A stretch of 64,000 nucleotides of DNA from NCBI GenBank assembly GCA_001179505.1, contig CDMY01000364.1:1-64000 (forward strand), written 5' to 3'. This stretch comes from Vitrella brassicaformis CCMP3155. Taxonomy: Eukaryota > Protista > Chromerida. Made by a program: the position numbers and the translations under genes. Positions 2,447 to 64,000 of this stretch are shown here, in pieces; the stretch's first letter is position 1, and every line of letters starts with the position of its first letter. Under the pieces are notes generated by a model. That model made no database searches and was not told the origin of the DNA. It saw only the letters and a list, made by a program, of their open reading frames with translations.

Positions 2447-3460
2447 TCAGCTATCCAAAATGCCGATCAACCTGAGCTGCGTGAAGCTGCCATAAGGGTC
2501 GATAAGGCGCCTCGTCTCCCCCTCCCGCATCTGCAGCAGCGCCTCGTCGAGCCAGCACCACAGACTCGACACTCGACACACACCCGCACGGCCATGGAAG
2601 ACTTTGTTGTTGCCGTCGAATGCATCCCGCCACACATCAATGTCGACCTCGACGCTGTCATTGAGTGCCGGCACATTGCCGGTGCCCTCCTGCACCACCT
2701 CATGTTGACATCCAGAGGGCGATCTGCCGATGACACACGCAGAGCCAATGAGCATCTGTAGCTGAGGCGTGAGAGTGAGAGAGAGAGAGGTACTGCTCAC
2801 GTCTGGTCGTTTGGCGCGTCTGTGGCGTTAATTTCGTTCGGCGGGCGCGGCACAAAGTCAAAGTCGGACTCCTGCTGGCGCTGCTGGCGAGCAGTGAGGG
2901 GTGGGTCTTGGCCGCTCGGGGGGACAGCTGGGGTTGTCGGGTCAGTCGGTGCTGCCGCAGTGGCCGTCCGCAGTTGCTCGACAATGTCACGGAGGCCGTA
3001 GTTGATGTGCACATCGGATTGTGAGGTCTCGCGCCTGATTGACAGAAACACACACACATGAGGAGAAAGCCATTTATGCTATGGCCTGGCTGTTGGTTGG
3101 TTGCCTGCAGGTCGGGCAGACGGCAAAAGGGTGGCCATGAGGGTGGCTGCCAATGAGGCCCTCAACACACTGCAGACACACAGACGGACAGAGGGATAGC
3201 GACCAAAGACACAAGGGTCCCTCACTGAGGCGTGAGTGCCGTCTGTCTGTGTGTACCGCTGCGCAGAAGGAGTGACCTGAAAGAGGACGGATGGACCATG
3301 ACACACACACGAACACACTACAAGTGAATTGTCGGTCCTCCCCTCCCTCCCTCTCTCTGTGTGTTTCTCACTGACCGCATCGGAGCCCATGAGGCTGCCT
3401 GTGGGCGTCCTCATGGTGGTACTCCTCCAGACAGACTCCACACTGGGGGATGGAGGCCAT
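2447..3460 (-). CDS. RING finger + UIM-like linker + FKBP-like domain (RING cassette copy 1)
   Basis: MASIPQCGVCLEEYHHEDAHRQPHGLRCG|HSFCAA|CVEGLIG...AVCPTCR gives a C3HC4 RING pattern, followed by INYGLRDIVEQL. A phase-2 intron joins to PSGCQHEVVQEGTGNVPALND...EALLQMREGETRRLI...LRLIGILDS. The model needs one GC-AG intron at 3104. Confidence 0.75.
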
Positions 3461-3849
3461 CTCGCGTCAGATCTGCCGCACACAACGGGCAACAAAGAGG
3501 TGTGTGTCACTGTCGGATGGTGTGGACGGAGAGAAGGCATAGATTCCCCGCTCACCGGGCTATTCTGTGGGTCGCTTTCCAAGGGCGGTGCGCGTGTGAA
3601 TGGCCAGATCTTGACCCGGATGGACGCGCGAGTCAGACAGAGCCCTTTCTGGGAGCGCGGAAAAGAGGCCAACGAGGGGAAAAGGAACAGGCAATCTGAG
3701 ACCTCTACTGTAGGGTTTTGTGGGCCAGCCCCCAACTTGAGACTCGCGAGCGGCGACGAGGCTGAGGCTGCCACTGGCGAGAGTCTGTTTTGCTGATCGT
3801 AGAGTTGTGTGAGGCCGACCAGAGCCCCCCAGCCGACATCCGGACAAAG

Positions 3850-5316
3850 ATGAGCAAACAGGTAAGTGGACGCACAAGACAGCTCAGGGATCAGCTCAGC
3901 GATGTCGAGTCCGTCAAGTATATCATCGACAGGGACGAGCACGTCCTCACACACGACAAGGACGGGGTAGGGACAATAGAAAGAGCATCGGTATGCACTC
4001 AAGAGGCTTTGTTCTTCATTCGTACAGACAACACCGTTCATGTATGCTGCTGTTAACGGACAAGTTGAGGTGATGTCGGTCCTGTATGCCAAGGATAGCA
4101 ACCTACTCACTCAGAAGAACTCTGTAGACACACTCCTCTTCCCTCTACCGCCGTGTCCATTGCCATCCTCTGTGCATGACACACACACAGGATGGCGGGA
4201 CGGCGCTGCATTTCGCTGCTAAGACCGACCACACTGCCGTTGTGACGCAACTGTGAGAGACACAGACAAAAGTTATCATTTCATCATCCACACAAGCTTT
4301 GTCTTTTAAATTCAGGCTCAAGTGGGGAGGCCGTGACTTGGCAGACTTGCTCGATGCACGCACCAATGTAGCACAGCGTGCATGTCTTTGACATATAATG
4401 TGTCCACTATTGTGTGTAAGCATATGTTGATTGCAGGACGGTTGGACGCCATTCATCGTCGCTGCAGGCTGCGGTCAACTTGGCGCGATGAAGCTCATCC
4501 ATGCGAAAGGAGGCGACGACCTTCTCATGCAGAAAACCTATGTAAGCTGCGTCCATAGAGAACTGACTGCCTTTCTCTCTGTGGCTATTGCCTTGTGGAT
4601 GGCAACTACAGGACGACTGGACGGCGCTCCACTGGGCTGCACACGGGGGGCGTTATGCGGTTGTCGCCCAACTGTGAGAAGTGCTCATCCCCTCTCCGAC
4701 GCGGACTCTTCATCTCCTCTTTTTTCGTTGCATGACTCAGGCTCGAGTGGGGTGGTGGCCGTGAAATGCTCGATGCACGGAACGAGGTGGAAGGGCACAC
4801 TTGTCTCCACACGCTCGTTCATGTGGCGATGTGTGTGTGTTGGTTGCAGAATGGCCTGACCCCATTCATCGTCGCTGCTGGCTGTGGTCAAGTCAGTGTG
4901 CTGAAGCTCATCCATGCTGAAGGCGGCAACAGTCTCCTCAAGGATAAGACCCATGTGAGAGAAGGGAGATAAAGGCAGACAGAATGCTGGTGTCCCCCTG
5001 TGTGTTGTGTGTGACAATAGACTGGGAACACGGCGCTGCATCTGGCTGGCATGCAGGGCCATACTTCCGTTGTGAAACAGCTGTGAGCCACGAGTGAATC
5101 ACCCACTTTCGGTGTCTTTGTTTTTCTCCTATGGTGCCATATGTCTGTAGGTTGGAGTGGGGCGGCGGGGCTCTCCTCAACATGAAGAACAACAAAGTAC
5201 TTGACATTTGCCTCACGTAATCGGTCTTCAAGAACTTTCTCCTTTTACAGGGGGAAACGCCATGGGACACCGCGACGAGCTCCGCGAGACAAACCATGGC
5301 TAGCTACAAGAAGTAG
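3850..5316 (+). CDS. Ankyrin-repeat protein (multi-exon, about 5-6 repeats; 5' end uncertain)
   Basis: Exons encode TPFMYAAVNGQVEVM, GTALHFAAKTDHTAVV, GWTPFIVAAGCGQLGAM, WTALHWAAHGGRYAVV, GLTPFIVAAGCGQVSVL, GNTALHLAGMQGHTSVV and GETPWD; stop TAG at 5314-5316. Confidence 0.85.
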
Positions 5317-6158: not shown

Positions 6159-6190
<32 letters not shown>

Positions 6191-6464: not shown

Positions 6465-7703
6465 CTATTCTATGCTGACCAAACGCAGCTCAACGTAGCG
6501 GCCAAAGAATCCGTCTGGCTCGATGATTTGCCTGACTTCCCCTTCTCGCATCGACAGCACCGCCTCACGCCGCCACTCATTCAGACGAGACACAGGACAC
6601 ACCAGCCCACGGAAATCGTAGGCTTTGTCCTGGCCGTCGGATCGATCACGCCAAACATCCCATTCGGCCTTGACGCGGTCGTTGGCTGTGGGCACTCTGC
6701 CGGTGCCCTCCGTGACAATGCGATACCGAGCACCCAACGGGGTCATAGTGAAGGCAGGACCGTTGTTGGTTGTCATTGGCACCGATCTGCGGATTCGACG
6801 ACGCGGGGGCGGGGGAAAGGGAGGGCCGTATGCAGACTGCTGGCCTCCGAATCCAAATCCGTCGCCACGACCGTCACCAATACCAGAATAGATCGCCATT
6901 TCACGCCCAACGTTGTCATTCATCTCTCTCAGATGTCGAGAGACCCACTTCCGTTGGCGACACTGCCGATGGCACACACAGACGCACCCACACAGACACA
7001 CAAAGCCAATGACCATCTATGATGACGCACGTGCGAGAGAGAGGTGCTGCTCACGTCGGGCTCGGCGAGTCTGTGGCATTGATTTCGTTCGACAACGGCA
7101 CCTCAAAGGTATAGTCGGCATTCTCCTGCTGGCGCCGCTGGCGAGCAGTGAGGGGTGCGTCTTGGCCGCTCGGGGGGACAGCTGGGGTCGTCGGGTCAGT
7201 CGGTGCTGCCGCAGTGGCCTTCCGCAGTTGCTCGACAATGTCACGGAGGCCGTAGTTGATGTGCACATCAGACTGTGGAGTTTCGCGCCTGATTGACAGG
7301 ACCACACATGAGAGCAGTCAAGCCATTACTAACGTGGTCTAGCTGCTGGTTGGTTGGCGTGCCTGCAAGTTGGGCAGACGGCAAAAGGGTGGCCATGAGG
7401 ATGGCTGCCAATGCGGCCCTCAACACACTGCCGACCCACAGACAGCGACCAAAGACACATGAGTTCTCACTGAGGAGTGAGTGCCGTCTGTCTGTGAGTA
7501 CCGCTGCGCAGAAGGAGTGACCTGATGGAGGACGGATGGACCATGACACACACGCCAACACACTACAAGTGACTTGTCGGTCCTCCCCTCCCTCACTCTC
7601 TCTGTGTTTCCCACTGACCGCATCGGAGCCCATGAGGCTGCCTGTGGGCATCCTCGTGATGGTAGTCCTCCAGACAGACGCCACACTGTGGAAGGGGAGC
7701 CAT
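6465..7703 (-). CDS. RING finger + UIM-like linker + FKBP-like domain (RING cassette copy 2)
   Basis: MAPLPQCGVCLEDYHHEDAHRQPHGLRCG|HSFCAA|CVEG...VCPTCR, then INYGLRDIVEQL, then FKBP exon PLGARYRIVTEGTGRVPTANDRVK...EAVLSMREGEVRQII...YVELRLVSIE*. Confidence 0.75.
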
Positions 7704-7969
7704 CTCGCGGCAGATCTGCCGCACACACCGGGCAACAGAGAGGTGTGTGTCACTGTCAGATTGGTGTGGACGGAGGGAAGGCATCGATTGCCGGCTCACC
7801 TGTCCTCCTCTGTGTCGCTTAACCACGGGCGGTGCGCGTCTGAATGGCCAGATCTTGACCCGCATGGACGAGTGAGTCAGACAGAGCCCTTTCCGGCAGC
7901 GCGAGGAGGCCAACGGAGGGGAAAGGAACACCGAAGGTTGGTTGGTGATTGTGTTTAACGAAAGTCAGA

Positions 7970-8130: not shown

Positions 8131-8501
8131 ATGGAGCCGCTCACTCGAGTGAATGCGACATCGCAGCTCGACCGCCACGTCGTCACGCTGCTCGAGTCCC
8201 TTGATGAGCGGCGCAAGGACAACACCTACGACATCAGCAAAGCCCTGACGCAGCATGGCGCATCTGACGGCTCGGCGGCCTCTGGTGACGATATGCTCGA
8301 ACTGAATGTCGGCGGGAGTCAGTCGTGTGTTCGCCGAAAGCACCTGACGAGCATCGAGGGCACTGTGCTGGCGGCCCTGTTCTCGGGCCGGTGGGACGGG
8401 CGGCTCATTCGCGGCGCTGACAATCGCATGTTCATCGACATGGAGTCCGAGGCGTTCGAGAAGGTCCGCAACACGCTGTTTGAGGGCGGCAAGGCGGCCG
8501 T
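8131..8501 (+). CDS. BTB/POZ (KCTD-type) cassette, N-terminal part, cut by assembly gap
   Basis: MEPLTRVNAT...LELNVGGSQSCVRRKHLTSIEGTVLAALFSGRWDGRLIRGADNRMFID; N run starts at 8502. Confidence 0.8.
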
Positions 8502-8801
8502 NNNNNNNNNNNNNNNNNNNNNNNNNNNNNNNNNNNNNNNNNNNNNNNNNNNNNNNNNNNNNNNNNNNNNNNNNNNNNNNNNNNNNNNNNNNNNNNNNNN
8601 NNNNNNNNNNNNNNNNNNNNNNNNNNNNNNNNNNNNNNNNNNNNNNNNNNNNNNNNNNNNNNNNNNNNNNNNNNNNNNNNNNNNNNNNNNNNNNNNNNNN
8701 NNNNNNNNNNNNNNNNNNNNNNNNNNNNNNNNNNNNNNNNNNNNNNNNNNNNNNNNNNNNNNNNNNNNNNNNNNNNNNNNNNNNNNNNNNNNNNNNNNNN
8801 N

Positions 8802-9168
8802 GCTGCCGGCGGAACGGCGGGAGTTTGTCGCACAACGCCACCTTCTCGAACGCCTCGGACTCCATGTCGATGAAAATGCGATTGTCTGCGTCGCGAATGA
8901 GCCGCCCGTCCCACCGGCCCGAAAACAGGGCCGCCAGCACAGTGCCCTCGATGCTCGTCAGGTGCTTTCGGCGGACACACGACTGACTCCCGCCGACATT
9001 CAGTTCGAGCATATCGTCGCCAGAGGCCGCCGAGCCGTCAGATGCGCCATACTGGGCCATCGCTTTGGTGATGTCATAGTCCTTGCGCAGGGCGTCGAGC
9101 CCCTCCAGCAGCGTGACGACGTGGCGGTCGAGCTGCGACGTCGCATTGACGCGAGTGAACGGCTTCAT
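8802..9168 (-). CDS. BTB/POZ cassette, N-terminal part, inverted copy, cut by gap
   Basis: MKPFTRVNAT...LNVGGSQSCVRRKH...FSGRWDGRLIRDADNRIFIDMESEAFEKV running into the N gap. Confidence 0.75.
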
Positions 9169-9450
9169 GGCCACAGGGTGACCAATACTGACACAGAGAG
9201 AGAGAGAGGAAAAGAGAAACGATAGATCTATCACGTAGAGGCCCTGCACCGTCTGGATGCCCTTTGTGAGCCTCCATCTTACCTCTCCCCTCTTATCCTC
9301 TACGGGCTCAAAGCGGAAAGGGGTGAGGCGAAGAGCGTAGTTGTTGTTGAGGTAAGTGAACTCAAACAGCTGCAGCACAATCTCCTCACACACCCGGCAT
9401 GTGCATCCTACCTTCTGTCTGTTGGTCTCTGTGCCCTTCATTTCTCAGTC

Positions 9451-10288
9451 ATGGAGCCGCTCACTCGAGTGAATGCCACATCGCAGCTGGACCTCCAGGT
9501 CGTCACGCTGCTCGAGTCCCTTGATGAGCGGCGCAAGGACAACACCTACGACATCAGCAAAGCCCTGACGCAGCATGGCGCATCTGACGGCTCGGCGGCC
9601 TCTGGTGACGATATGCTCGAACTGAATGTCGGCGGGAGTCAGTCGTGTGTTCGCCGAAAGCACCTGACGAGCATCGAGGGCACTGTGCTGGCGGCCCTGT
9701 TCTCGGGCCGGTGGGACGGGCGGCTCATTCGCGGCGCTGACAATCGCATGTTCATCGACATGGAGTCCGAGGCGTTCGAGAAGGTCCGCAACACGCTGTT
9801 TGAGGGCGGCAAGGCGGCCGTTGACCTGCTCATCACAGAGATAGCCAACCGCAACTACAGAGGTACTCACGGCAACGAGATGAGTGCAATGTGTGTGTGT
9901 GGACGGCCTGTGCCTCTGCCCCTTTGTGTGTGTGCAGGTCTTCATGACTTCTGGGTGCGTCGGCTGCTGTCGCCCATCGAGAAGCCCTCCCGCAAGCGCA
10001 TCCGCACCGACGAGGCGCCCTCGGTGTCGGCCGGCGGCGTGGATGAGCTGCGGGGGTTCTGCAAGACCGTCGAGTCGTTCCTCAAGGGCTACTTGGCGGA
10101 GAAGGGCAAAGTGGACGAGGAGGTGCAGCAGCAGAAGCACCAGTACGACGGCCTCATCAAGGAAGTCATGGTAGGCAGAGAGGGGGAGGGATCAGGGCGA
10201 AAGATCTTCGTCAGTGTGTGTCTGTGTTTCTGTGTGCTCTTTAGGCTGTGAGTGCCTTCCTGAAGCCCGTCAGTGGTGACGATCCCAT
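9451..10288 (+). CDS. Tandem-BTB cassette gene, partial (gap at 3' end)
   Basis: ORF 9451 (MEPLTRVN...NVGG...) is near-identical to ORF 11079 at offset 1628. Confidence 0.8.
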
Positions 10289-10588
10289 NNNNNNNNNNNN
10301 NNNNNNNNNNNNNNNNNNNNNNNNNNNNNNNNNNNNNNNNNNNNNNNNNNNNNNNNNNNNNNNNNNNNNNNNNNNNNNNNNNNNNNNNNNNNNNNNNNNN
10401 NNNNNNNNNNNNNNNNNNNNNNNNNNNNNNNNNNNNNNNNNNNNNNNNNNNNNNNNNNNNNNNNNNNNNNNNNNNNNNNNNNNNNNNNNNNNNNNNNNNN
10501 NNNNNNNNNNNNNNNNNNNNNNNNNNNNNNNNNNNNNNNNNNNNNNNNNNNNNNNNNNNNNNNNNNNNNNNNNNNNNNNNNNNNNNNN

Positions 10589-10796
10589 GGTGCTTTCGGC
10601 GGACACACGACTGACTCCCGCCGACATTCAGTTCGAGCATATCGTCGCCAGAGGCCGCCGAGCCGTCAGATGCGCCATACTGGGCCATCGCTTTGGTGAT
10701 GTCATAGTCCTTGCGCAGGGCGTCGAGCCCCTCCAGCAGCGTGACGACGTGGCGGTCGAGCTGCGACGTCGCATTGACGCGAGTGAACGGCTTCAT
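10589..10796 (-). CDS. BTB/POZ cassette fragment, inverted copy, cut by gap
   Basis: Near-identical to the 8961-9168 copy (MKPFTRVNAT...VRRKH) at offset 1628. Confidence 0.65.
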
Positions 10797-11078
10797 GGCC
10801 ACAGGGTGACCAATACTGACACAGAGAGAGAGAGAGGAAAAGAGAAACGATAGATCTATCACGTAGAGGCCCTGCACCGTCTGGATGCCCTTTGTGAGCC
10901 TCCATCTTACCTCTCCCCTCTTATCCTCTACGGGCTCAAAGCGGAAAGGGGTGAGGCGAAGAGCGTAGTTGTTGTTGAGGTAAGTGAACTCAAACAGCTG
11001 CAGCACAATCTCCTCACACACCCGGCATGTGCATCCTACCTTCTGTCTGTTGGTCTCTGTGCCCTTCATTTCTCAGTC

Positions 11079-12760
11079 ATGGAGCCGCTCACTCGAGTGA
11101 ATGCCACATCGCAGCTGGACCTCCAGGTCGTCACGCTGCTCGAGTCCCTTGATGAGCGGCGCAAGGACAACACCTACGACATCAGCAAAGCCCTGACGCA
11201 GCATGGCGCATCTGACGGCTCGGCGGCCTCTGGTGACGATATGCTCGAACTGAATGTCGGCGGGAGTCAGTCGTGTGTCCGCCGGAAGCACCTGACGAGC
11301 ATTGAGGGCACTGTGCTGGCGGCCCTGTTTTCGGGCCGGTGGGACGGGCGGCTCATTCGCGACGCTGACAATCGCATTTTCATCGACATGGAGTCCGAGG
11401 CGTTCGAGAAGGTCCGCAACACGCTGTTTGAGGGCGGCAAGGCGGCCGTTGACCTGCTCATCACAGAGATAGCCAACCGCAACTACAGAGGTACTCACGG
11501 CAACGAGATGAGTGCAATGTGTGTGTGTGGACGGCCTGTGCCTCTGCCCCTTTGTGTGTGTGCAGGTCTTCATGACTTCTGGGTGCGTCGGCTGCTGTCG
11601 CCCATCGAGAAGCCCTCCCGCAAGCGCATCCGCACCGACGAGGCGCCCTCGGTGTCGGCCGGCGGCGTGGATGAGCTGCGGGGGTTCTGCAAGACCGTCG
11701 AGTCGTTCCTCAAGGGCTACTTGGCGGAGAAGGGCAAAGTGGACGAGGAGGTGCAGCAGCAGAAGCACCAGTACGACGGCCTCATCAAGGAAGTCATGGT
11801 AGGCAGAGAGGGGGAGGGATCAGGGCGAAAGATCTTCGTCAGTGTGTGTCTGTGTTTCTGTGTGCTCTTTAGGCTGTGAGTGCCTTCCTGAAGCCCGTCA
11901 GTGGTGACGATCCCATTCGCTCGGTGGAGGTCTGCGGCCATCTCATCGCGACGGCCGAGTCCACACTCACTGAGATGGGGAAAGTCGCACTGGCGAGCAG
12001 ATTCCAGCTGTAAGTGACCACCACACACACCACACACGAGGCGGGCAGAGAACAGACGTTTCCCTGTTGGTCGCTTAATGTGTGTGGCCAGGTGGCCCGC
12101 TGCCGTCGAGGATGTGTCAGAGGAGCACATCCGTCGACTGGTCGACTACCACCGCCGCAAACGACACGCCGCCGCCGTCACTGACGAGTGTCTGCAGGGC
12201 TGCCTGGCTGTGCCGCTCAAGATGGGCAACGGCCCCAAGCAGGACTTCTTCAACAAGACAGCCGCCATTTACGGTGTCGATCTCAGGTACGCCAGCCGCC
12301 CGAAGGAAAGACCCATTGGATGAGATGGTCGAATCTTTCCCCTCTGTGTGTGTGTGTCACATGGATAGCGTCAAGTATGAGGAGAGCCCGCTGGGAGTGC
12401 GCTACGAGATTGTGACGGCGGGCACCGGCCCCAAGCCGCAGCTCGACAGCCACATCCAATACGACTATACTGAGTGGCGCAATGGATTCGGCAGCGACTC
12501 AAAAGTCTTCAACCTCCAGTGAGTGAGCCAGCCCGTCTTGTCAGCATCCGTCTGCGCGCATGTGTCATGCCTGCCGTAGTGGTTGCAAGAGCTCCGTGTC
12601 GGCCCTGAGCAGTTGGTCGCGTGAGGCCTTGACGAGCATGACTGTCGGCGAGACGCGACGCCTTATCGTGCCCTCAGACGTCCGCAAAGTGTCTGTCTTA
12701 TTTTTCTACGACACGCCGTCGTACGCGGAGCTCAAGCTGGTCGACATTATCAGCAGGTGA
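11079..12760 (+). CDS. BTB + coiled coil + second BTB-like unit + FKBP-like domain
   Basis: NVGG...FSGRWDG BTB, then SVEVCGHLIATAESTL...LVDYHRRKRH. A phase-2 intron leads to SVKYEESPLGVRYEIVTAGTGPKPQLDSHIQYDY...|GCKSS...EALTSMTVGETRRLIVP...AELKLVDIISR*. Confidence 0.8.
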
Positions 12761-12815
12761 ACATGGCACACACTCGACGCGGAGATCCTCTTTGCTGTCT
12801 TTGTGATTCATGTAG

Positions 12816-14398
12816 CGGCAAGCCGGTCGCTGCTGCTGCTGCTGCTGCTGCTTCTGCTCCTGCTCCTGCTGCCCAAACCAAGTGAGTCCATTCACGTGCA
12901 CATGCACTTAGCCACAAGACGGTCTGCCTGTCTGTTTGCTGTCTGTCAGTCTGTCTGTGGCGCCCAACACCAGCAGACATAAAGAAGTTCAGGAGAAGTA
13001 CAAGAAGCTACTTTCTCGGATAGCGCGTAGCCGCACTTCCTGTTTGCCTCCTCCTGGAGCCACAGGTGAGTCGAGTCCAACGCCACTCGCCTCATACAGG
13101 TGCGCCCAACCACCTGTGTCACAACCGTGCGGCTACAGCCGTTCAAGGGGCACCACCACGGCCAAGAAGGTCAAGGTACGTTTGATTGCACACATGACAT
13201 CACCGGTGGGTCCGTCTCGCCATCCTGCCTGCCTGTGTGTGCCATATTGTGTCGTTGCTGTCTTGTGTCGGGTTTACGATTCCAACGCGCCCAAGAGGGC
13301 CCGTAGCGCATACATTCTCTTCAAGATGGACCGCCGCGACGAAGTCATCAGCCAAGACCCTGACTTGTATGGGCGCGTGACGGTACGCTCACACACACAC
13401 ACACACACACACACGCCCCGACCGATGCCCATCAATCAGACGGTGGCCATCCATGTGTGTGTGTGTGTGTGTGTTGTCTGGATGGATCGATGTCTTCGTC
13501 ACTCAGGAGGTGTCCAAGATATGTGGGGCCGAGTGGAAGAGCATGACGAACAAGCAGAAGAGGCCTTACCAGATCAAAGCCGAGAAGGACAAGGTCAGGC
13601 ACACACACATACACGGACACAGGCACAGGGGGGTCACTAATTGTGCACGGCGCCCTATGTGTGTGTATTGTCTATGTGTCAGGCGCGTTACGAGCAGGAG
13701 CTCATCGAGTACCACAAGCAATTGGCGGCCGCTGACTCCGACCACCAGTAGAGCGAACACACCACCCCGCACACAGGCAAACAGCGATCGATGCGGTACC
13801 AACCGTCCGTCTCTGCCTGCCATTCTTTGTGTGTCATGTAGCGGCAAGCCACAGAAGGACGGCGCGCCGGTCGCTGCTTCTGCTGCTGCTGCCGCCGCCA
13901 ACTGCAGCCCTTCAACGGCTACGGGCACCACCACGACGGCCAAGAAAAAAGCGCCAAGAAAAGTCAAGGTACGTTTGATTGCACACATACATGAAGGATG
14001 GGCCTGCATCGGTCGTGTGTTTGTTGGTTTCAGACGTCAGTCAGTCATCCTCTTGCATATACTCTCTTCACGATGGACCGCCGTGAGGCCCTCATCCTCC
14101 AGCATCCTGACCTCAGAGGGAGCGCTGGACGAGAGTGCTGGACGAGTTGTGATATATACGAGAAGAGGTTGGCCAAGATGTTGGCTGCCGAGTGGAACAG
14201 CATGACGGACAAGCAGAAGAGGCCTTACGAGACTCAGGCCAAGAAAAAGGTCACACAGATGCACACACGAGCTCGTGGACGGTGCACTTGTGTGTGTCGG
14301 CCATATGGTGTGTGTGGGCTGTGCGTCAGGCGCGTTGCCAGCGAGAGCTCAACGAGTATTGCAAGCGATTGGCGGCCGCTGACTCCGACCAGCAGTAG
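12816..14398 (+). CDS. Two tandem HMG-box units (second degenerate); separate gene or spliced 3' extension of the upstream BTB-FKBP gene
   Basis: DSNAPKRARSAYILFKMDRRDEVI...EVSKICGAEWKSMTNKQKRPYQIKAEKDKARYEQEL, then a second unit YTLFTMDRREAL...AAEWNSMTDKQKRPYETQAKKK. Both units begin with the same acceptor tcatgtag|CGGCAAGCC. Confidence 0.7.
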
Positions 14399-14825
14399 AG
14401 CGAACAGACTATGCCGCACACAGGCAAACAGCGATCGATGCGTTACCAACCGTCCGTCACAAGCAATTATGGGCCGCCTTCGTCGGCGGATGGTCCACAC
14501 GAATCGCATGGACAGGGAGAGTCTGACGAGCCGCGTGATACATACATGTACACCCCCTAAGAATGCTATCTATCCCACTGCACAGGGCGAAGTAACAAAC
14601 AACAATACTACTGGCACCAACACACACAGACTAAGCTACTCTACCAGCGACCCATGTGGCCGAAACTGGTCACTCGAGCACGGACACACAGATGCACACA
14701 CAGGCAGACAAGCAGAGACACAAACGGCAGGCAGGCAGGAAAGCGCTGACTAATCCGCAGGCAGACACTCATTACATTCATATTCATTCGACACAGAAAA
14801 ATCACCACCTCTGCAGACACGTACG

Positions 14826-45765: not shown

Positions 45766-45911
45766 AGATGGAAAAGCGGTCTAGGCGGATGCAGGTCTTT
45801 CTCTCCTTTGACGTAAAAGCGCGCAGCCCTTCATCCCTCTATGAAGTGCCAAGCTGTGCAGCCCTTGCACACTAGAGAGGAAAGCGATGAGTCATTACAT
45901 TACGCCTCAGA

Positions 45912-45980
45912 TCAGGGTTCCCACTCGCTTCCGTTTTTGCCCTCCTGCAGGGTTTGAAACCCTTAACCCGTAACCCTAGC
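45912..45980. promoter_or_regulatory. Telomere-like palindrome AGGGTTTGAAACCCT plus AACCCTA in a divergent intergenic region
   Basis: The palindrome at 45949-45963 is the exact reverse complement of the one at 8033-8047; it lies upstream of BTB gene 46266. Confidence 0.45.
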
Positions 45981-46265
45981 ACCCCGTCGCCCACTGGGTC
46001 GTGGTGAGCGACAAGCGCAGAAAGAATCACGAATGACGTGCATGCGTCAGAACATCCACCTCTGAGCTTGCCGGTCTTCAGCTCGTTGGGGAAAAAACAG
46101 GTCCCTCAAAACCCTGCCTGCGAAGAACAGGAATATGACTTCGGCCTCGTGAGGGCATCAGGTGTGCAACGACAATGGGACCAGACTCAAACCTACTCAT
46201 GGTGCCTGCTCGGTTGTGTGTGGTTGTCAGGCATCGCTGACAGATCTGCTGCGCCGCAACAAACG

Positions 46266-48229: not shown

Positions 48230-48370
48230 GACACTTCACGTCGAGGTCAGGTTCTTGGCGATTTAATGAGTGCCACACACCACATTTTTCGGTGAGGGTG
48301 AGGTGCGGCGGGTCATCCTGCCTACAGTGGAAAGAAGATATGTCGAGTATAGGCTGGTGTCCATCCTGTG
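48230..48370 (+). pseudogene. 5'-truncated FKBP-like remnant
   Basis: GEGEVRRVILPTVERRYVEYRLVSIL* with no intact N-terminal half. Confidence 0.6.
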
Positions 48371-52923: not shown

Positions 52924-54240
52924 TTATGCACATACAGGTATGTATGCTGGTGTGTGTGTCTGTAGAGAGGGTGCCCCTCGCCCCGTCCATGAGCCCACCG
53001 GCCCATCATCCCCGGCTGTTCAATGTGCGTGTGTGTTCCATGTGGATGAGTCGGATCTCGACGTACCGCTTGGTCTTGCCCAGCCGATGCACACTCGGAG
53101 GCACTATCATCCTGCACACAGCAGCACACACACAATACATACATCAACACGCACCACCAACCTTAGCCACCCACCGACCTGCGTATCTCTCCGACCCGCA
53201 TGCTGAGGACGGCCTCCCGCTCCCAGGGGAAATACAGGTCACTCACCACCACAGACCAGCCCTACACATAATTGGTTGATAGCCACACACACACACAGAC
53301 GCACACACCCATAAGTGATGCCATACTCAATCCTCGCCCATCTGTGTGTGTGCGGACATGCCTTCTTGTGGACCATCTTGTTGCCCTCGAAGTAGTCGTA
53401 CCTGCACACACAGACAGAGACCACACACGTACGTCTACCCAACATGGGCACACACACGCACGAGCTGACCAGACGGTGTAGTCGATCTTGACGGTTTGGT
53501 TGAGGTAGAGAGGGAAGGTCCCCTTGCCCATTTGCACTATCTGGAAGCGCACACCCAACACAGATGTCTGCGGCTGAGCGATGAAGGCCAAATCGTTCTG
53601 GTGAGCCGAGGGCAGCTCGTCGGGGATCGACGCCGATAGGCTTGTGGGTGTGCTGGCGCTGCTGCTGCTGCTGGCGCTGGGCACACCCACATTGCTGAAT
53701 CAGACAGACAGACAGACAGACAGACAGATCCTCACAACACATGGATGGCTGCATGCGGTGTGTTTGTGGGCACTTCTTGTGCACTGTGTTGTTGGCGATC
53801 TCAATGCCGTCGGGGCACATTATCTGCTTGACATGCTCCTGCCGAATGTGCCGCCGCTGCCCGGCGGCCACGTAGTAGAAACCGCCGTGTGCGTCAACGA
53901 AGGCCTCACGGCCGAAGAACAGACCCACAAACGCCTCTTTGTCTTCCATCGCCTTCGCAAGACCATTCCACCACACACACAGCGCACTCCGTGATGCTAT
54001 GAATGGTGCATCCTGGGATGAGCTCTTTTCGTCGTTTTCTCACTTGAGGCGGTGTTGTGGGTCTTCTGTCGTCAAATAACAGCACAGATCTTCGTAAAGG
54101 CCAGATCTGCGAGCTCAGGAGAGCTGGCATCTGCGAGCTTGGATGTGGGAGCAGTAAAGAGAGTCAAAGAGGTCAGTAGGCCGTCAAGGAAGGCGTCAGA
54201 GTCACCAGGCAGGCACAGATCTGGAGTCGGATGTCATGCA
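52924..54240 (-). CDS. Intron-interrupted FKBP-like gene with the same small GQR N-terminal domain
   Basis: DAHGGFYYVAAGQRRHI resembles GKGGYEFDVNGQRLAI. FKBP pieces VLGVRFQIVQMGKG...QTVKIDYTVW|YDYFEG...|WEREAVLSMRVGEIRR|MIVPP...RYVEIRLIHME are split by at least three introns. Start uncertain. Confidence 0.6.
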
Positions 54241-54605: not shown

Positions 54606-56156
54606 ATGATGGATGGCACCGAAGCCGTAAGCAAAGACACATCGCATCAACATGATCACTTCACCCAATGAGCCTGTCTTCCGACACGTACACATGCTGT
54701 GTGCAGGCTGCTGCTGCTGCTGCTGCTCTTGTCACTATCGACGTGTCAGGTGACTGCACACGTGATGGGTGACCGACTGCATGAATGTAAGATTTCTTGT
54801 TTGCAGGCACGGACGAGTGGCCTTCAGGCGTGGAGCGCGTTCAGGGGACCGTCATCGACACGGAGCGGACCTGGCCGCAGCTCAAAAAGGCCATTGCCAA
54901 CAAGGGAGCAGTCGGCGAAGCACCACCTGGCCTTCTCGAGGACAAATACTACGATGGGAAAGACTACTTGTGTCTGAGCCTCCCAGTCAAACAGGTGGGC
55001 ACCACCAATGGCCACATGGGGCAGTGGCTTGATGTTATCTGTGTATGTCACTTCAAGAGCGTGAGGAGGTGGTGAAGAACACCACCGTGATTGTAGCTGA
55101 GGAGCTAGCGCGCAAGGTGACTGAGGAGAAGATGAAGATCATCATCTACGACATGCTCTCGCGCGAGGACACCGAGCTGACCGAGACTCAGGAGATCATG
55201 GACAGCTCCCACCCTCTCTACAGAAGCGCCTCAGAGCGGGAAAGAGACGGATACGCCTACATGGCTCTGGCGAAGGACGTCATACCAAGACACACAGCCA
55301 TCGGTAGGCGACTGACGTCGAGCAAACAATCTGCTTCTCACCTTCCCGTTCTGTGTGGTTGTCTCAGGCCTGTACGGTGGGCGCCTGGTGGCGACGACGG
55401 ACAGGCGGTGCAAGCCGGAGAACTACAACCGATTCTACATTTATGGCGTGGATGCCTACCAGACAAAGAAGGGCAATAACATCTTTCATCTTGATGGCTT
55501 CAGATTTAGAAGCGCCGCCGGTCAGTCAGCAGGCAGGCAGGCAGGCAGTAAAGATGGGTAACCTTGTGACTTGATATGTGTGTGCCTGTGTGGTGTCTCC
55601 TCTGTCCAGGGATGATGACCCGCGTGGCATGACGGGCAAGAGCGCCAATGTGGTGGCTCAGCCTTTTGAGTTGTTCGGCGTCCCTTTCATCTGCCATATT
55701 TCACTCAGGGCCATCAACAAGGACGAGGTACTCACACACGACGCCCGCACATGCTTCAAAGGACTGACGGTTGATTGGCTCAGGAGGTGCTGGTGGACTA
55801 TGGGAGGGATTACTTCACAAGTGACGATTGGAGGGCTCAGGAGAAGAAACAGGTGCCTACTTCCAATCAATGGCAGCACACATGTGTATATTCTATGTTA
55901 TCTGCGTCATTCAGTCGCAGCAAGCCATGGAGGAGCTGCGTCGGTTGAGGGACCGACAGCCGTTGCTATCTGACGTCAAAGAAGAGGCAGATGGTACGCA
56001 GGCGTCGCATTGATACTTAAGACATTGCCAGGCAGATGTGTGTGAATGTGTGTGCAGCGTTGAAAGAAGGGATGGCCAAGAAAGACGAAGAGATTGCCGC
56101 TCTAAAGCAGGAGGTGGAGCAGTTGGCGCAGGTGCAATGTCCCGCCAAGAGGTCAC
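54606..56156 (+). CDS. SET-domain-like protein with a C-terminal coiled coil (possibly spliced to the downstream BTB-FKBP cassette)
   Basis: Motif order ALAKDVIPRHTAIGLYGG, FHLDG...RSAA, DDPRG...ANV and RAINKDEEVLVDYGRDYF matches the SET fold (A..DI..G..IG.Y.G / DG...N / R.I..GEEL..DYG..YF). One internal splice is unresolved. Confidence 0.6.
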
Positions 56157-56241
56157 GTGGCGTCGGCACCGAAAGTACAGAGGCCCTCCGTCTATAGTCC
56201 ACCCACGTGTGTGTGCTGATGTCTTGTATTTACGCACGTAG

Positions 56242-57969
56242 ATGTGCTACCCGACGGTGACGCCACCAGCTCCAAGAAACGACGTCAAGACCAGCACAAT
56301 GGACCAGCAGCACCAGCAGCAGCAGCAGCCAGCAAGGGCGACAACATTTATGAGGAGTTCAGCGCCCAGGCGATTTTCAATGAGCTGCACATGCCTGTGA
56401 CGGCCATCAGTGACGCCATCACCCAGCTGCACGCCCGGATCCGCCAAGCTGACGACGATGCTCAGCGAGAGAGGCAGAAGCACGGCGCATCGGACCCATC
56501 AGCAGCGTCGCCCGATGACATTCTGCTGCTCAATGTGGGCGGCAGCGAGTGGCGAGTGAAGCGGAACCACATGACTCAAGGGGAGGGCGTGGAGGGCACT
56601 CTGCTGGCGGCGCTGTTCTCGGGCTGCTGGGACGGCCGGCTGGTCAGTCACGACAAACAGCGTGTGTTCCTCGACATCTGCCCGGAGGCCTTCAAGACCA
56701 TCCATACGGCCATCCTCAACGCCGCCACCCTCCGCCAGACGGGTAACGCCGCGTCAGTTGCCACGCTGCTCGACGAGGCATCGAAGCAGAATAGCTACAC
56801 CGGTAAGGGCCATGAAGGCGACTACACACTCATCCCCTCTTATCACACTTTTCGTTTGTCTGGCCGTGGTGTAGGTTCCCATGGCTTCTGGATCAAGCTG
56901 CTGCTGTCGCCACTGGACAAGGCGGCCTCAGCGGCCCCTCCCGGAGGCGTCGCTGAGCCGCGCCTGTCCGCCACGGACAGCCCTGCCGCGATGGGCGACG
57001 CCGTCAGGACGCTCGAAGCTATCATGAAGGCCATCGTCAAGGAGAAGGCCCGGCTGGAGGGCCAGCTGCTGGCGGCACAAGGACGACGTGACAAACTCGA
57101 CAAAGAGATACAGGTGACGAGATGCGCCCAGAGGGAAAGGAGGCGCCTTGATGTGGATCGGTGGCTTGTGCACCTGGCAGGCCGTCATGCCCTTCCTGGC
57201 GCCTCTGAGTGGCGGCGATGCCATTCGGTCTGTCGACGTGTGCGGGAGTCTCATCTCGACGGTGCAGTCCACCTTGGACGAAATGGGCGACATTGGGGCT
57301 TCACAACCGATTCGATATGTAAGTTAAGCCAACCACACACATCATTCAGATGTCCCTCAATACGGGGTTTCCGTCAGGTGGTCGCGCACACGTGCGGTTG
57401 AGGTGGTGCAGCCCGACCACATCTGCCGTATGGTCGATTACTATCGCCGCAAGCGGCTCGGTGCGTCGGCGGCCGACATGGCTGCGGTGCTCAAGATGGC
57501 CAATTCGACAGAGCAGGCGGCCTTCGACATCAACACGGCCATGTACGGCGTTGTCAAGCCCGACACACACACCACACACGGCGCGCAGCAGACCAGGTAC
57601 GCAGATGGAGAGCAGCGCAGGAAAGCTGCCCTCGCCGTCTATCTGTCATGTTTGTTCCTTTGCAGCGACATTGATGGCTTCATTGAGATGCCATCTGGTG
57701 TGCGCTATCGCATCGTCACGGAGGGCACCGGCAGAGTGCCGACACTCAACGACCGCGTCAAGACCGACACCATTGCGTGGAGTGACGGATTCGACGGCCG
57801 GAAGAAGGCATTCGATTACCGTGGGGAGGTGCGTCGTGTGTCTGATTTGGCTGAGTGGTGGCGTAAGGCGGTGCTGCCGATGAGGGAGGGGGAAGTGAGG
57901 CAAATCAAACTGCCACGCGGATATCCTTATCCCCGCTATGTTGAGCTGCGTTTGATCAGCATAGAGTAG
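56242..57969 (+). CDS. Tandem BTB + FKBP-like domain (RVPTLND subfamily)
   Basis: EEFSAQAIFNELHMPVTAI...LLLNVGGSEWRVKRNHMT...; phase-2 intron ACCAG|gtacgc...ttgcag|CGACATT to GFIEMPSGVRYRIVTEGTGRVPTLND...YVELRLISIE*. Confidence 0.8.
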
Positions 57970-61639: not shown

Positions 61640-61686
<47 letters not shown>

Positions 61687-61786
61687 TGTATCTTATCTAC
61701 CAGGTCACATGCCGAATAGCTGGAAACTCGACGAGAGGCTGAGACAGGAGCAGGTTGACATGATCGAGGGCTCACAGAGGACATGA
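59969..61786 (+). CDS. FAD4: Plastid FAD4/TMEM189 (Kua) type fatty-acid/lipid desaturase
   Basis: Signal+Phe leader (VGVLG-FVPP); His motifs DLFSGVFHWAVDNYG, FQGHHKYPW, QEFHKYSH and EHGLHHSEPFEGHYSILFGWFNPLLD. Confidence 0.85.
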
Positions 61787-63009
61787 CGTGCCGTCCCGTG
61801 TGATGTGTGTGTGTGTTGGTGGTCGGGGGGCGGGGCTGAGTGTACAGCGATTTTCCACCATCCCGTCTGTCAGTTGACGTGTACATAGAGACGTGGGATC
61901 AGGGAGGTTGGCATGAGTGTTCAGTGTTGAGTGTTGATACTTGGCTGGATGCATTGCCCTTGCAATCAGTCAGTCTGTGTGGGGAGCGATTGTAGTGGAC
62001 CTCGACGCTCAAACGCAGTGGAGTGACGGCCCTTCTGCCTGTGATCAGCGGCAGGCAGAGAGAACGTCGCTTGAGCGCGTTTGAGCGCCGAGAGGACACC
62101 AGAAACACTACCCCTTGTCCGGATAACTCTCACTATCGTTTTGTCATCGAGAGAGACAGTTTTGTCACCCGCTCTCACCATTTTGACTTCCGCATGCGCA
62201 CAATCGTGTGAGTGTCGATAGAAAGAGCCGACCGACCAAGTGCGTGTATGGGTTCTCTTGGCACTACGATCAGCTTGGTGGACGTCTTCTCTGCCTGTGA
62301 TTGACAGCAGGCATGAAATCCGTCTGTCGAGGGGATCTGAGCACCGAGAGAGCACCAGACACGCACATGCACACACCAGTGTATGTCTGAAGAGAGAGTT
62401 TTGTCTTGACACCGTTCTGCCTCGCTGTCGAATACAATGGCCTTGCCTCTCCGCTCGCCTGTCTTTCATGCATTCACACCGGTCTTGCCTTCATTACTTG
62501 ACAGGTTTCTCGGTGTCTGCGATATCGATGTGTGTTTTTCGGTGTGCTGCTGTGACTGCAGTGAGTGGACAGCCAGCCTGTTGGTTGACGGTGCTGATCA
62601 CGTGAATCATGCTCAGTAAGAGTGGGTCAGAAGGGAAGGACGCGTTCATTGGCAGAGCACACATAGTTTTCGCGCACCGCACGTCCACACCATGAGACAG
62701 CACAACACACCGCTCACATGCTGAATCGACTACTACAGGGACACATACACACACACGCGAACGAGGACAAGACAGCCACAGAGCCATAGATGCCACAGAC
62801 GGACCACGCACACACAGGAGGCATAGTATGCGCCTACGTGTATGTGTCCTCACACCAAGACATAAAAAACACTTAGACTCTCTGGCACACAGGCCGCCAT
62901 GGACAGCACACTCACTCCTTCACTCAGCACCGGGGCAGACACTCACCCAGGCACACATGAGTGTGACGAACACAGCCGCCCCCACATGTGTGTCTGTGTG
63001 CACTCTCTC

Positions 63010-64000
63010 CTACTCTATGCTGATCAGCCGCAGCTGAACGTAGCGGCCATATCCGGCTGGTAAAATAATTTGCCTGACCTCCCCCTCACTCATCGACAGC
63101 ACCGCCTCACGCAGCCACCCATACAGACCAGACACACGACCCACCCGCCCACGGTCATCGTAGTATTTGTCCTGGCCGTCGAATGCATCACACCACGTTA
63201 TCCAGTCGTACTTGACGCGGTCGTTGTTGTAATTTGTCGGCACTCTGCCGGTGCCGTCCGTGACGATGCGATACCGATTACCTAACGGGGTCACAGTGAA
63301 GCCATCACCGCTGCAAAAAGGACAAACAAGACAGATGGATGGCGAGGTCATCTTTCCTGCGCTGCTCTCCATCTGCAGACCTGATGACGCCGTACATGGC
63401 CGCGTTGACATCAAAGGCCCTCTGCGCCTGCTCGTCGGTCAGCTGCAGCGGCACACTCGCTTCTTTAGGTGAGGCGCCGTGTCGTTGACGGCGGTGGTGG
63501 TCGATCATTCGGCTCATGTGGTCGGGCGGCACGTCGTTAACGGAGCCGCCCCACCTGAAATGGTTGGCACACAGGACACGATGAGCACCCGTGTCTGATT
63601 TTCTTGTTGTTGGTTTTGTAATGTGATCTCATCACTCACACGGATGCACTGTTGCGCCGCTTGAGTGCCATATCCTCCGGCATCGCGTCGATGGTCGACT
63701 GACACGTCGAGAGGACTTCTCCACACACATCGACAGAGCGAACGGGGTCATCGCCGTCGATGGGCGCGAGGAATGAACTCACAGCCTGGCAATACAAACG
63801 ACGAGCGAATGAATCCTCGGACGGTTTCCCTTTGTGAGTGCGTGTCGCTCACCTCTATTTCGGTCATGAGCTGCTCGTATCGCATTTTCTCTGTGTGCAG
63901 CTCCCCTTCGAGTTGTCGGTTCTGGTCAGCATGGGCCTCGAGGACGTTGTTCAGTGCCACGATGAGACCCCTGGCTGCGTCGGGGATGCCCTCTGCAGTC
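63010..64000 (-). CDS. 3' part of a tandem BTB + FKBP-like gene (RVPT subfamily); 5' end outside window
   Basis: Coiled coil QLEGELHTEK, DDPVRSVDVCGEVLSTCQSTI, MIDHHRRQRHG, AMYGVI; phase-2 intron to GDGFTVTPLGNRYRIVTDGTGRVPT...YVQLRLISIE*. Confidence 0.8.

What the first reader, a model, noticed from the sequence alone, without database searches (positions are those of the whole stretch)
2447..63330. Local expansion of a divergent FKBP-fold module: 21 copies in 64 kb, plugged into unrelated proteins
FKBP-like modules (G[VA]RY.VV..G.G..P...Q.V....W.D.FDG...MR[VE]GE.R.I...Y.E.RL..I) start near 2447, 6465, 12370, 25241, 31060, 34246, 35188, 35573, 36101, 36548, 37920, 47552, 48290 (remnant), 48966, 49439, 49934, 50317, 50717, 52960, 57665 and 63010. 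They sit behind RING cassettes, tandem-BTB cassettes, plastid leaders and an unrelated Pro-rich leader, and are followed in one case by HMG boxes. Classical FKBPs are low-copy foldases, and I know no described BTB-BTB-FKBP or RING-UIM-FKBP family. Inference: this is a mobile, rapidly diversifying recognition module, the candidate undescribed system of this window.
Basis: partly seen in the sequence, partly recalled or inferred. Interest (0 to 1): 0.88.

Follow-up and report, generated by a model that had tools for sequence, protein, structure and literature searches.

The report
Shuffled enzyme-dead FKBP exon family
The coral-associated alga Vitrella brassicaformis has multiplied one small gene piece, a stripped-down and probably enzyme-dead FKBP domain, and swapped it among neighbouring genes, including ubiquitin-ligase-type genes. 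It looks like a home-grown binding module; what it binds is unknown.

Summary
All 21 stated places carry a ~95-residue module: 18 full-length copies (one of them decayed by a frameshift), 2 split by introns, 1 remnant. None touches an assembly gap. The window is Vitrella brassicaformis CCMP3155 scaffold CDMY01000364.1, positions 1-64000.

The module has an FKBP fold (AlphaFold pLDDT 94.8, TM about 0.8 to Mip-type FKBPs). It has lost the 80s loop and most pocket residues, so it is probably not a prolyl isomerase.

It is encoded as a self-contained exon, mostly entered through a phase-2 intron. Many stop codons overlap a GTGAG donor, which explains the two spliced four-module arrays. RNA contigs show BTB-to-module and array splicing.

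Exchange between neighbouring genes is supported:
- Paralogous BTB_2 genes carry modules of different clades (AU p = 1.8e-5).
- One RING paralogue received a BTB-type cassette.
- One HMG paralogue lost its module by an internal deletion.

The pocket-side half evolves near neutrality (dN/dS 0.99) and the rest at 0.36. This shows uneven constraint, not positive selection.

'Tandem BTB' and 'UIM' were not supported. All named relatives are from Vitrella, and I found no paper on the family. This scan had already found the same family on other pieces of this genome. I class it as a new variant of a known kind.

The parts
2447..3460 (-). Annotated 226-aa gene: RING finger plus a C-terminal FKBP-like module (module at 2456-2731).
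   Evidence: Gene call with RING Pfam hits. Module HMM E = 3.5e-30. RING ligands are visible across the exons, and a phase-2 acceptor lies just before 'SPSG'.
6465..7865 (-). RING paralogue (6929-7865, 171 aa) followed by a type-B module ORF (P0014, 6465-6899; module 6468-6752). The ancestral acceptor now leads to a short tail. An in-frame phase-2 acceptor 34 nt before the module could join the two parts, but this is untested.
   Evidence: From the module start to more than 100 nt past the stop, the sequence is 84% identical to the BTB-gene cassette at 47552-47948.
8131..14398 (+). Annotated 1161-aa gene: BTB_2, an intron-split FKBP-like module (12376-12516 and about 12587-12751), then HMG boxes. 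It crosses two assembly gaps inside a 99.5% tandem repeat, so the model is unreliable upstream of about 11900.
   Evidence: The paralogue P0065 elsewhere has the module followed by an HMG box (73.7 bits).
3..1584 (+). HMG-box gene, a duplicate of 11743-13736 that lacks the module. It keeps the first 18 nt of the module exon and then joins in frame to the later 'TTTA..KK' exon, so an internal deletion removed the module.
14636..15909 (-). Third RING paralogue (195 aa), with a different tail and no module.
25241..26227 (-). P0025 (235 aa): an N-terminal part with no recognisable domain plus a terminal module (25244-25525), entered by a phase-1 intron.
31060..32649 (-). 436-aa BTB_2 gene with a type-A terminal module (31063-31362). 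The gene body is paralogous to the 45887 gene (86.7% nt identity). The module and its 3' flank are closest to the decayed array module at 48957-49239 (81%).
32860..34551 (+). 443-aa BTB_2 gene with a type-A terminal module (34276-34548).
   Evidence: BTB_2 at 22.1 bits. Gene call. Module E = 2e-43.
35188..37439 (-). Array A = P0005 (605 aa). It has a hydrophobic leader, a 45-aa N-domain and four modules (36551-36838, 36108-36398, 35583-35864, 35191-35481), each on its own exon with phase-2 introns.
37529..38254 (+). P0011 (213 aa) with a terminal type-A module (37946-38254).
45887..47844 (+). 496-aa BTB_2 gene with a type-B terminal module (47560-47841). RNA contigs show the splice from the body exon into the module exon (47466 to 47553, GT..AG, phase 2).
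48276..48368 (+). Remnant of a type-A module: the last 30 residues plus the stop.
   Evidence: E = 7e-7. It is covered by a 295-nt contig in the spliced-RNA-like runs.
48966..49304 (-). Decayed fifth module of array B, annotated as the 112-aa protein P0017. Its acceptor is kept, a 1-nt deletion near the 3' end shifts the frame, and the upstream exon has lost its GT donor.
   Evidence: An unspliced contig spans 49045-49531.
49439..51623 (-). Array B = P0004 (586 aa). It has a leader, the N-domain and four modules (50729-51013, 50320-50619, 49937-50227, 49442-49735). All internal donors read NN|GTGAG, so an unspliced transcript meets a TGA stop.
   Evidence: Spliced joints at 50631>50720 and 50240>50321 in run X7.
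53006..54130 (-). N-domain plus a more divergent module interrupted by three introns (P0067-like; module pieces at 53352-53573 and 53169-53258).
54609..57969 (+). P0012 (800 aa): an N-terminal region that UniProt names SET, then BTB_2, a coiled coil, a conserved unknown region and a type-B module (57679-57966) entered by a phase-2 intron.
63010..64000 (-). Fourth gene of the BTB_2 paralogue group that also holds 31060, 45887 and 54609 (the window has six BTB_2-bearing genes in all), with a type-B terminal module (63013-63300). Its body runs off the window.

Best explanation
This is a multigene family seen so far only in Vitrella, built on a ~95-residue degenerate FKBP-fold domain.

Shown:
- The domain keeps the five-stranded sheet and helix of FKBPs, but the 80s loop is halved.
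- Only the equivalents of F36, D37 and W59 of the canonical pocket are conserved.
- It is encoded as one self-contained exon. In the arrays and the BTB genes this exon is entered through a phase-2 intron.
- It ends in a stop that, in type-A copies, overlaps a GTGAG donor. The same exon can therefore be terminal or internal, and tandem copies splice in frame at once.
- Local duplication has stacked it into two four-module arrays.
- Exon-scale replacement and deletion have given paralogous BTB_2, RING and HMG genes different modules or none.
- The core is under purifying selection, while the former pocket face changes at about the neutral rate.

Inferred:
- The module no longer isomerises prolines and serves as a protein- or peptide-binding head.
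- Behind BTB_2 (KCTD-type) and RING domains it would be the target-recognition end of ubiquitin-ligase adaptors.
- In the arrays, which carry a signal-peptide-like leader followed by Phe, it would act as a multivalent binder or holdase in the plastid or secretory route.
For: - Fold: the profile of 18 modules hits Mip-type FKBPs at E = 2.6e-7. The AlphaFold model has pLDDT 94.8. Foldseek gives TM about 0.8 to LpMIP, BpMip, FkpA and FKBP12. The best AFDB matches are Vitrella paralogues.
- Degeneracy: Pfam FKBP_C reaches its cut-off in only 1 of 10 copies. Alignment with a canonical FKBP domain shows the 80s loop deleted and the Y26, F46 and V55/I56 equivalents not conserved.
- Exon cassette: exact mapping of annotated proteins and the splice-site phases.
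- Expression: GT..AG joints in two runs for the BTB-to-module splice and for the array introns. MMETSP transcripts exist for paralogues, including BTB+module and SET+module forms.
- Exchange: type-A clade supported at 97/96. The AU test rejects the BTB-gene modules as one clade (p = 1.8e-5) and the array-B modules as one clade (p = 4e-4).
- Rates: module dN/dS 0.73-0.93 against 0.41-0.53 for BTB bodies at similar dS. Pocket side 0.99 (CI 0.68-1.5) against 0.36 (0.26-0.52) for the rest.
- Range: at least 61 of the best 150 cluster representatives (50% identity) match the whole profile. All 22 sampled clusters whose source names an organism are Vitrella, as are all 7 named hits of a separate protein search. 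The rest are unnamed transcripts or environmental contigs.
Against: - No binding partner, localisation or enzymatic data exist. The recognition role is an analogy.
- F36, D37 and W59 equivalents remain, so weak isomerase or ligand binding is not excluded.
- dN/dS is not above 1. The pocket/rest partition was drawn after I had seen the alignment, and gene conversion between copies distorts pairwise rates.
- BTB_2 hits in the window are at or just below the Pfam cut-off (13.7-22.5 bits), and Cul3 binding is untested.
- RNA evidence covers only two of about 14 genes and comes from assembled contigs.
- The AU groups were defined by architecture, but I tested them after viewing the tree.
Confidence: 0.6

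Rival explanations
1. Neutral birth-and-death ('genomic drift'). The cassette multiplies because tandem clusters and phase-compatible introns make duplication easy. The module is a generic scaffold or solubility domain, and change on the pocket face is relaxed constraint left over from loss of catalysis, not diversification of targets.
For: Pocket-side dN/dS is about 1, not above it. One copy is decayed and one is a remnant. One paralogue lost the module in frame and is still annotated as a gene. The same debate exists for plant F-box genes (PMC3030570, abstract seen).
Against: 17 of the 18 full-length copies keep open frames. The core is under purifying selection at 0.36. Fusions are spliced and transcribed. 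The module recurs behind two kinds of ligase domain.
Confidence: 0.2
2. The modules are still active FKBP-type prolyl isomerases or chaperones, and the family is an expansion of foldases (for example for the plastid) fused to client-recruiting domains.
For: The FKBP fold is intact. The F36, D37 and W59 equivalents are mostly kept. UniProt names two of the proteins 'Peptidylprolyl isomerase'. Both arrays carry a leader.
Against: The 80s loop (Y82, H87, I90/I91) is deleted, and the Y26, F46 and V55/I56 equivalents vary. Pfam scores fall below the cut-off in 9 of 10 copies. The pocket face evolves neutrally, which is unexpected for an active site.
Confidence: 0.12
3. Artefact: an assembly or annotation error, or dead pseudogene copies, inflates an ordinary small family.
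For: Gaps lie inside a 99.5% tandem repeat at 8.9-11.9 kb. Some gene models are doubtful: the split RING/P0014 pair, and P0017 called as a gene.
Against: Copies differ by 15-60% and are not collapsed repeats. Several independent DNA-like runs hold the region. Spliced RNA joints exist. No module touches a gap.
Confidence: 0.03
4. The module is carried and spread by a transposable element.
For: The type-B cassette moves together with about 110-400 nt of conserved 3' flank. That flank is very deep in all runs, so it is multi-copy.
Against: No inverted terminal repeats flank three cassettes. No transposase or reverse transcriptase appears among the annotated genes with Pfam hits. Breakpoints lie at the module start or inside homologous introns, as expected for recombination between paralogues.
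Confidence: 0.03

Closest known systems
FKBP-type peptidyl-prolyl isomerase domain (Pfam PF00254 FKBP_C), Mip/FkpA-like subgroup
   Same: Same fold (TM about 0.8), detectable profile homology (E = 2.6e-7), and shared GxGxxP, F-D and M-x-x-G-E-x-R motifs.
   Different: The 80s loop is halved. Most pocket residues are not conserved. There is an 8-residue insert after the F-D-G motif. Scores are below the Pfam cut-off in most copies. The family is high-copy and exon-modular rather than low-copy.
Non-catalytic FKBP-like domains used for protein binding (AIP, FKBP52 FK2, FKBP38, FKBP6). That these are inactive is my own knowledge.
   Same: They are FKBP folds that appear among the structural and profile matches. 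They act as interaction domains rather than enzymes, which is the role proposed here.
   Different: Those are single-copy, conserved co-chaperone parts, usually joined to TPR domains. Here the domain is a fast-changing C-terminal cassette on BTB_2, RING, HMG and array genes.
Expanded ubiquitin-ligase substrate-receptor families (MATH-BTB, F-box superfamilies; F-box case in PMC3030570)
   Same: A ligase-docking domain is joined to a variable binding domain. The family is lineage-specific, tandemly clustered, and shows birth-and-death with pseudogenes.
   Different: The variable head is an FKBP fold, and the BTB is the T1/KCTD type. The same head also occurs without any ligase domain. Ligase function is not shown.
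Multi-FKBP tandem proteins (for example the 669-aa five-domain protein P0026 from the library search)
   Same: Several FKBP domains sit in one chain.
   Different: Those domains are canonical, with the full 80s loop. The Vitrella arrays mix module clades and grow or decay exon by exon.

Membership tests
FKBP superfamily (fold level) | Five-stranded antiparallel sheet wrapped around a short helix | tested here: met
   AlphaFold model at pLDDT 94.8 with strands and helix in FKBP order. Foldseek TM 0.76-0.83 to many FKBP structures.
Pfam FKBP_C (PF00254) | Score at or above the curated gathering cut-off (21.1 bits) | tested here: not met
   Of 10 copies, one scored 21.6 bits, one scored 16.2, and the others gave no hit. 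Homology is still supported by the profile search at E = 2.6e-7.
Catalytic FKBP prolyl isomerase | Conserved pocket residues (FKBP12 Y26, F36, D37, F46, V55, I56, W59, Y82, F99) and an intact 80s loop. The residue list is my own knowledge. | tested here: not met
   Alignment with the canonical domains of P0026 keeps only the F36, D37 and W59 equivalents. The 80s loop is cut from about 20 to about 10 residues.
Catalytic FKBP prolyl isomerase | Measured isomerase activity or FK506/rapamycin binding | not testable with these tools
   Needs recombinant protein.
BTB_2 / KCTD-type Cullin-3 adaptor | T1-type BTB domain | tested here: inconclusive
   Window copies score 13.7-22.5 bits against a cut-off of 21.4. 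The paralogues P0082 and P0127 score 26.2 and 25.5 bits.
BTB_2 / KCTD-type Cullin-3 adaptor | Binding to Cullin-3 | not testable with these tools
   No interaction data.
RING-type E3 ligase | C3HC4/RING-H2 zinc-ligand pattern | tested here: met
   Precomputed RING Pfam hits on the three annotated genes. Ligands are visible across the exons. The paralogues P0020 and P0029, which have RING plus module, score 33-41 bits.
   Profile-profile comparison of the second region with the first BTB gave probability 0.2%. No BTB appeared in the PDB profile search.
Transposable-element cargo | Terminal repeats or an element-encoded enzyme near the cassettes | tested here: not met
   No flanking inverted repeats around three cassettes. 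No such Pfam hits among the called genes.

The most novel reading that the evidence does not exclude
The FKBP-derived cassette is the variable target-binding head of a Vitrella-specific repertoire of BTB_2 and RING ubiquitin-ligase adaptors and plastid-routed multivalent binders. It is diversified by exon swapping and by selection on the former proline-binding pocket. In effect this would be a new class of substrate receptor built from a dead isomerase, possibly used against microbes, viruses or partner organisms on coral reefs.
Probability: 0.25. Interest if true: 0.75.

Novelty: new variant of a known kind. Interest (0 to 1): 0.5.

Why it matters
FKBPs are normally few, conserved enzymes. 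Here one has lost its enzyme features and become an interchangeable exon seen at 21 places in 64 kb, in at least about 60 sequence clusters genome-wide.

The locus is a clean natural example of exon shuffling in a protist. Phase-compatible introns, a stop codon that doubles as a splice donor, arrays that grow and decay exon by exon, and datable exon replacements between neighbours are all visible in one window.

If the module is a binding head for BTB and RING proteins, it would be a new type of ubiquitin-ligase substrate receptor. It could also be a compact scaffold of interest for engineered binders.

It also matters for annotation. These proteins are currently labelled 'peptidylprolyl isomerase' or 'uncharacterized', and the first label is probably wrong.

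Tried and rejected
- Pfam on single modules gave almost nothing. A family profile and a structure prediction were needed.
- A word-indexed protein search with one module found only two environmental proteins. The exhaustive profile search was needed to see the family.
- The second conserved region of the BTB genes is not detectably BTB.
- The 45-residue N-domain matched nothing in PDB. The Atlas gave only weak leads to OCRE/WW-like domains (score 0.39), which I do not rely on.
- No Atlas cluster combines BTB_2 with FKBP_C.
- No inverted repeats flank the cassettes.
- There is no real telomere at the scaffold end, only a short interstitial TTTAGGG patch at 16293-16357.
- The AU test did not reject the two RING-associated modules as a clade (p = 0.13). 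The RING swap therefore rests on the DNA breakpoints alone.
- Literature searches for Vitrella with FKBP or prolyl isomerase found nothing relevant.
- RNA support could be checked for only one 5.8-kb stretch.

Full report
**Identity of the window.** Exact look-ups of proteins encoded here place the window on Vitrella brassicaformis CCMP3155, scaffold CDMY01000364.1 (99,867 bp). Window coordinates equal record coordinates 1-64000. G+C is about 0.57, and there are three runs of N at 8502-8801, 10289-10588 and 20196-20495.

**Observation.** I cut the six frames into stop-free pieces and ran an iterated HMM search from one module.
- Eighteen are full length, with E from 1e-24 to 2e-43.
- Two are interrupted by introns (12376/12548 on +, 53352/53169 on -).
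- One is a 30-residue remnant (48276-48368).
- Fifteen of the 21 lie on the minus strand.

No module lies near a gap. The annotated 1161-aa gene at 8131-14398 contains the 12376 module and crosses two gaps. Those gaps sit inside a 99.5% identical tandem repeat (8961-10288 = 10589-11916), so that model and the local copy number cannot be trusted.

**Fold.**
- Single modules barely register in Pfam: FKBP_C at 21.6 bits in one copy, 16.2 in another, and nothing in the other eight.
- The family profile finds Mip-type FKBPs in the PDB at E = 2.6e-7, and further FKBP52, FkpA, AIP and FKBP6.
- AlphaFold2 on the alignment gives pLDDT 94.8 with strands and helix in FKBP order.
- Foldseek returns more than 100 FKBP structures with TM about 0.8.
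- In AlphaFold DB the best matches are Vitrella paralogues named 'HMG box domain-containing' and 'Potassium channel tetramerisation-type BTB domain-containing'.

**Degeneracy.** I aligned the modules with canonical FKBP domains of a library protein (P0026). The modules keep the equivalents of F36, D37 and W59. The Y26, F46 and V55/I56 positions vary. The loop between the last two strands is about 10 residues instead of about 20, which removes Y82, H87 and I90/I91. There is also an 8-residue insert after the F-D-G motif. The residue numbering and roles are my own knowledge of FKBP12. I infer that isomerase activity and FK506 binding are unlikely. This is not shown.

**Gene context.** Public gene calls and exact mapping of library proteins give the following architectures.
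- RING plus module: 2447-3460, 226 aa.
- A RING paralogue (6929-7865) next to a separate module ORF (P0014, 6465-6899).
- A third RING paralogue without a module: 14636-15909.
- Five BTB_2 genes ending in a module: 31060-32649, 32860-34551, 45887-47844, 54609-57969 (P0012, 800 aa), and 63010 onward.
- A sixth BTB_2-bearing gene with module then HMG boxes: 8131-14398.
- Two arrays, P0005 (35188-37439) and P0004 (49439-51623), each with a leader, a 45-residue N-domain and four modules.
- Three smaller genes: P0025, P0011 and a P0067-like gene.

Domain support varies.
- BTB_2 scores in the window are at or near the cut-off (13.7-22.5 bits). In two paralogues elsewhere they are clearer (about 26 bits).
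- The HMG boxes are solid (33-35 bits in exon pieces; 73.7 bits in P0065).
- RING is supported by precomputed hits and by the paralogues P0020 and P0029.
- The 'SET' label of P0012 is only an automatic name, and Pfam gave nothing at E <= 0.01.
- The supposed second BTB shows no profile similarity to the first (hhalign probability 0.2%).
- No UIM hit is on record for the annotated RING genes.

**Exon cassette.** In both arrays each module is one exon whose length is a multiple of three, flanked by phase-2 introns. The BTB genes enter their module through a phase-2 intron too. For P0012 this follows from the gene model. For the 45887 gene it follows from the RNA joint 47466>47553, which lies 7 nt before the module's first codon. 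Sequence inspection suggests the same for 31063, 34276, 63013 and 2456. P0025 is an exception, with a phase-1 intron.

All three internal donors of array B, and one of the three in array A, read NN|GTGAG, so an unspliced transcript meets TGA immediately. The terminal type-A modules end in 'CTG TGA G..', which is the same sequence. A module can thus be terminal or internal depending on whether that GT is used, and a tandem copy of intron tail plus exon is spliceable in frame at once.

Array B shows the reverse process. Its fourth module has AT where its neighbours have the GT donor. The fifth module downstream keeps its acceptor but carries a 1-nt deletion, and it is annotated as a separate 112-aa protein. 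One RNA-like contig runs unspliced across that junction.

**Expression.** Two of the four runs laid on 45880-51640 contain spliced contigs.
- GT..AG joints at 46157>46227, 46733>46804 and 47466>47553, in the BTB gene. The last of these enters the module exon.
- Joints at 50631>50720 and 50240>50321, the array-B introns, in run X7.

Several paralogues elsewhere exist as MMETSP transcripts, among them BTB+module and SET+module forms.

**Exchange between genes.** A maximum-likelihood tree of the window's modules has a well-supported type-A clade (97/96). It contains modules from both arrays, from two BTB_2 genes and from P0011. A type-B group is formed by 6468, 47560, 57679 and 63013.
- Holding together the modules of the four BTB-gene paralogues is rejected (AU p = 1.8e-5). 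So is holding together the five array-B modules (p = 4e-4).
- At DNA level, the body of the 31060 gene is 86.7% identical to the 45887 gene and shares its last intron. From the module start to just past the stop it instead matches the decayed array-B module (81%).
- The RING paralogues are 84.5% identical down to the module start. Beyond that point, the 6465 copy carries a type-B cassette with more than 100 nt of BTB-gene 3' flank. The protein tree alone does not reject a RING-module clade (p = 0.13).
- The HMG gene at 3-1584 duplicates 11743-13736. It retains only the first 18 nt of the module exon, fused in frame to a later exon, which is a deletion of the module.
- No inverted repeats flank the cassettes, and no element-type genes are annotated nearby.

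I read this as recombination and gene conversion among clustered paralogues, not transposition.

**Rates.** Close module pairs have dN/dS of 0.73-0.93. The bodies of the same BTB genes have 0.41-0.53 at similar dS. I split the module into a pocket-side half (seed residues 29-56 and 71-82) and the rest, and pooled five independent pairs. The pocket side gives 0.99 (bootstrap CI 0.68-1.5) and the rest 0.36 (0.26-0.52). The pocket side was higher in every resample. This shows uneven constraint, not positive selection. Gene conversion and my after-the-fact partition weaken the result further.

**Range.** The exhaustive profile search of 1.84 billion cluster representatives found 1266 hits at E <= 1e-3 and 245 at E <= 1e-10. 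Among the best 150, at least 61 match the whole profile including the short C-terminal part. The others are canonical multi-FKBP proteins that match only profile positions 3-85.

I sampled 30 representatives from that search. In all 22 clusters whose source names an organism, that organism is Vitrella brassicaformis. All 7 named hits of a separate protein search are Vitrella too. The rest are MMETSP transcripts without an organism name, or unnamed ENA and JGI contigs. One of these is a 2.5-kb metagenome contig with at least three modules at 72-85% identity to this window.

The Atlas holds no large cluster combining BTB_2 and FKBP_C. Two literature searches found nothing on this family. The proteins are public under automatic names, two of them as 'Peptidylprolyl isomerase'.

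**Earlier notes of this scan.** The same family was already noted on other pieces of this genome. Two of those notes were followed up with conclusions like mine, and overlapping notes cover parts of this window.

**Verdict.** The structural and evolutionary reading is well supported: a degenerate FKBP fold, packaged as a shufflable exon, amplified and exchanged locally. The functional reading, a binding head for ligase adaptors and other proteins, is plausible but inferred. I class it as a new variant of a known kind, of moderate interest.

Noticed in passing
window 51218-51379 and 37046-37207 (exon 2 of both arrays); 53776-53949; paralogues P0022, P0051 and others: A conserved ~45-residue N-terminal domain (VGLLDG..VY.DG.GGY...V.G.R..I) precedes the module in 23 of the fetched paralogues. 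AlphaFold predicts four short strands (pLDDT 82-95) followed by a disordered linker. There was no PDB match, and the only Pfam scan that covered it (full-length P0022) gave no hit. The Atlas gave only weak OCRE/WW-like leads.
   Followed up: partly
window 8068-11916: Direct and inverted repeats of a BTB_2-coding unit surround two assembly gaps (8961-10288 = 10589-11916 at 99.5%; 8068-8465 is inverted relative to 8840-9229). The copy number and the 1161-aa gene model here are doubtful.
   Followed up: partly
window 47810-48002: The 3' flank of the type-B cassette contains a 17-nt imperfect hairpin (47853-47903). Contig depth there is 10-40 times that of its neighbours in all four runs, so this flank is highly multi-copy in the genome.
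   Followed up: no
window 57181-57594, 47201-47466, 31367-31935 (protein region 'IRSVEVCG...DHIRRLVDYYRRKRL'): A conserved ~65-residue region lies between the coiled coil and the module in the BTB genes. It is not detectably BTB and matches no solved structure.
   Followed up: partly
window 16210-16357: A short interstitial patch of telomere-like TTTAGGG / AAACCCTA motifs in both orientations lies in the intergenic region between the RING gene and a methyltransferase gene. It may be a promoter element.
   Followed up: no
L004 (ENA metagenome contig ERZ893784 k147_3488946, 2458 bp): An environmental contig carries at least three modules, with 72-85% nt identity to 48352-49554 and 33815-34580 of the window. 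It is either an unassembled Vitrella paralogue cluster or a close relative in nature.
   Followed up: partly
paralogues P0153 (647 aa) and P0013 (240 aa), elsewhere in the genome: A predicted transmembrane stretch (WGWLKGRWWL...) lies next to the module in both. In P0153 it follows the module and is followed by a Cys-rich region; in P0013 it precedes the module. The family therefore also includes membrane-anchored forms.
   Followed up: no
P0004, P0005, P0048 and P0149 N-termini (window 51477-51623, 37293-37439): Hydrophobic leaders end in G or A followed by Phe, and then an S/T/R-rich stretch. From my own knowledge this pattern is typical of bipartite plastid-targeting signals of red-lineage complex plastids. 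No predictor was run.
   Followed up: no
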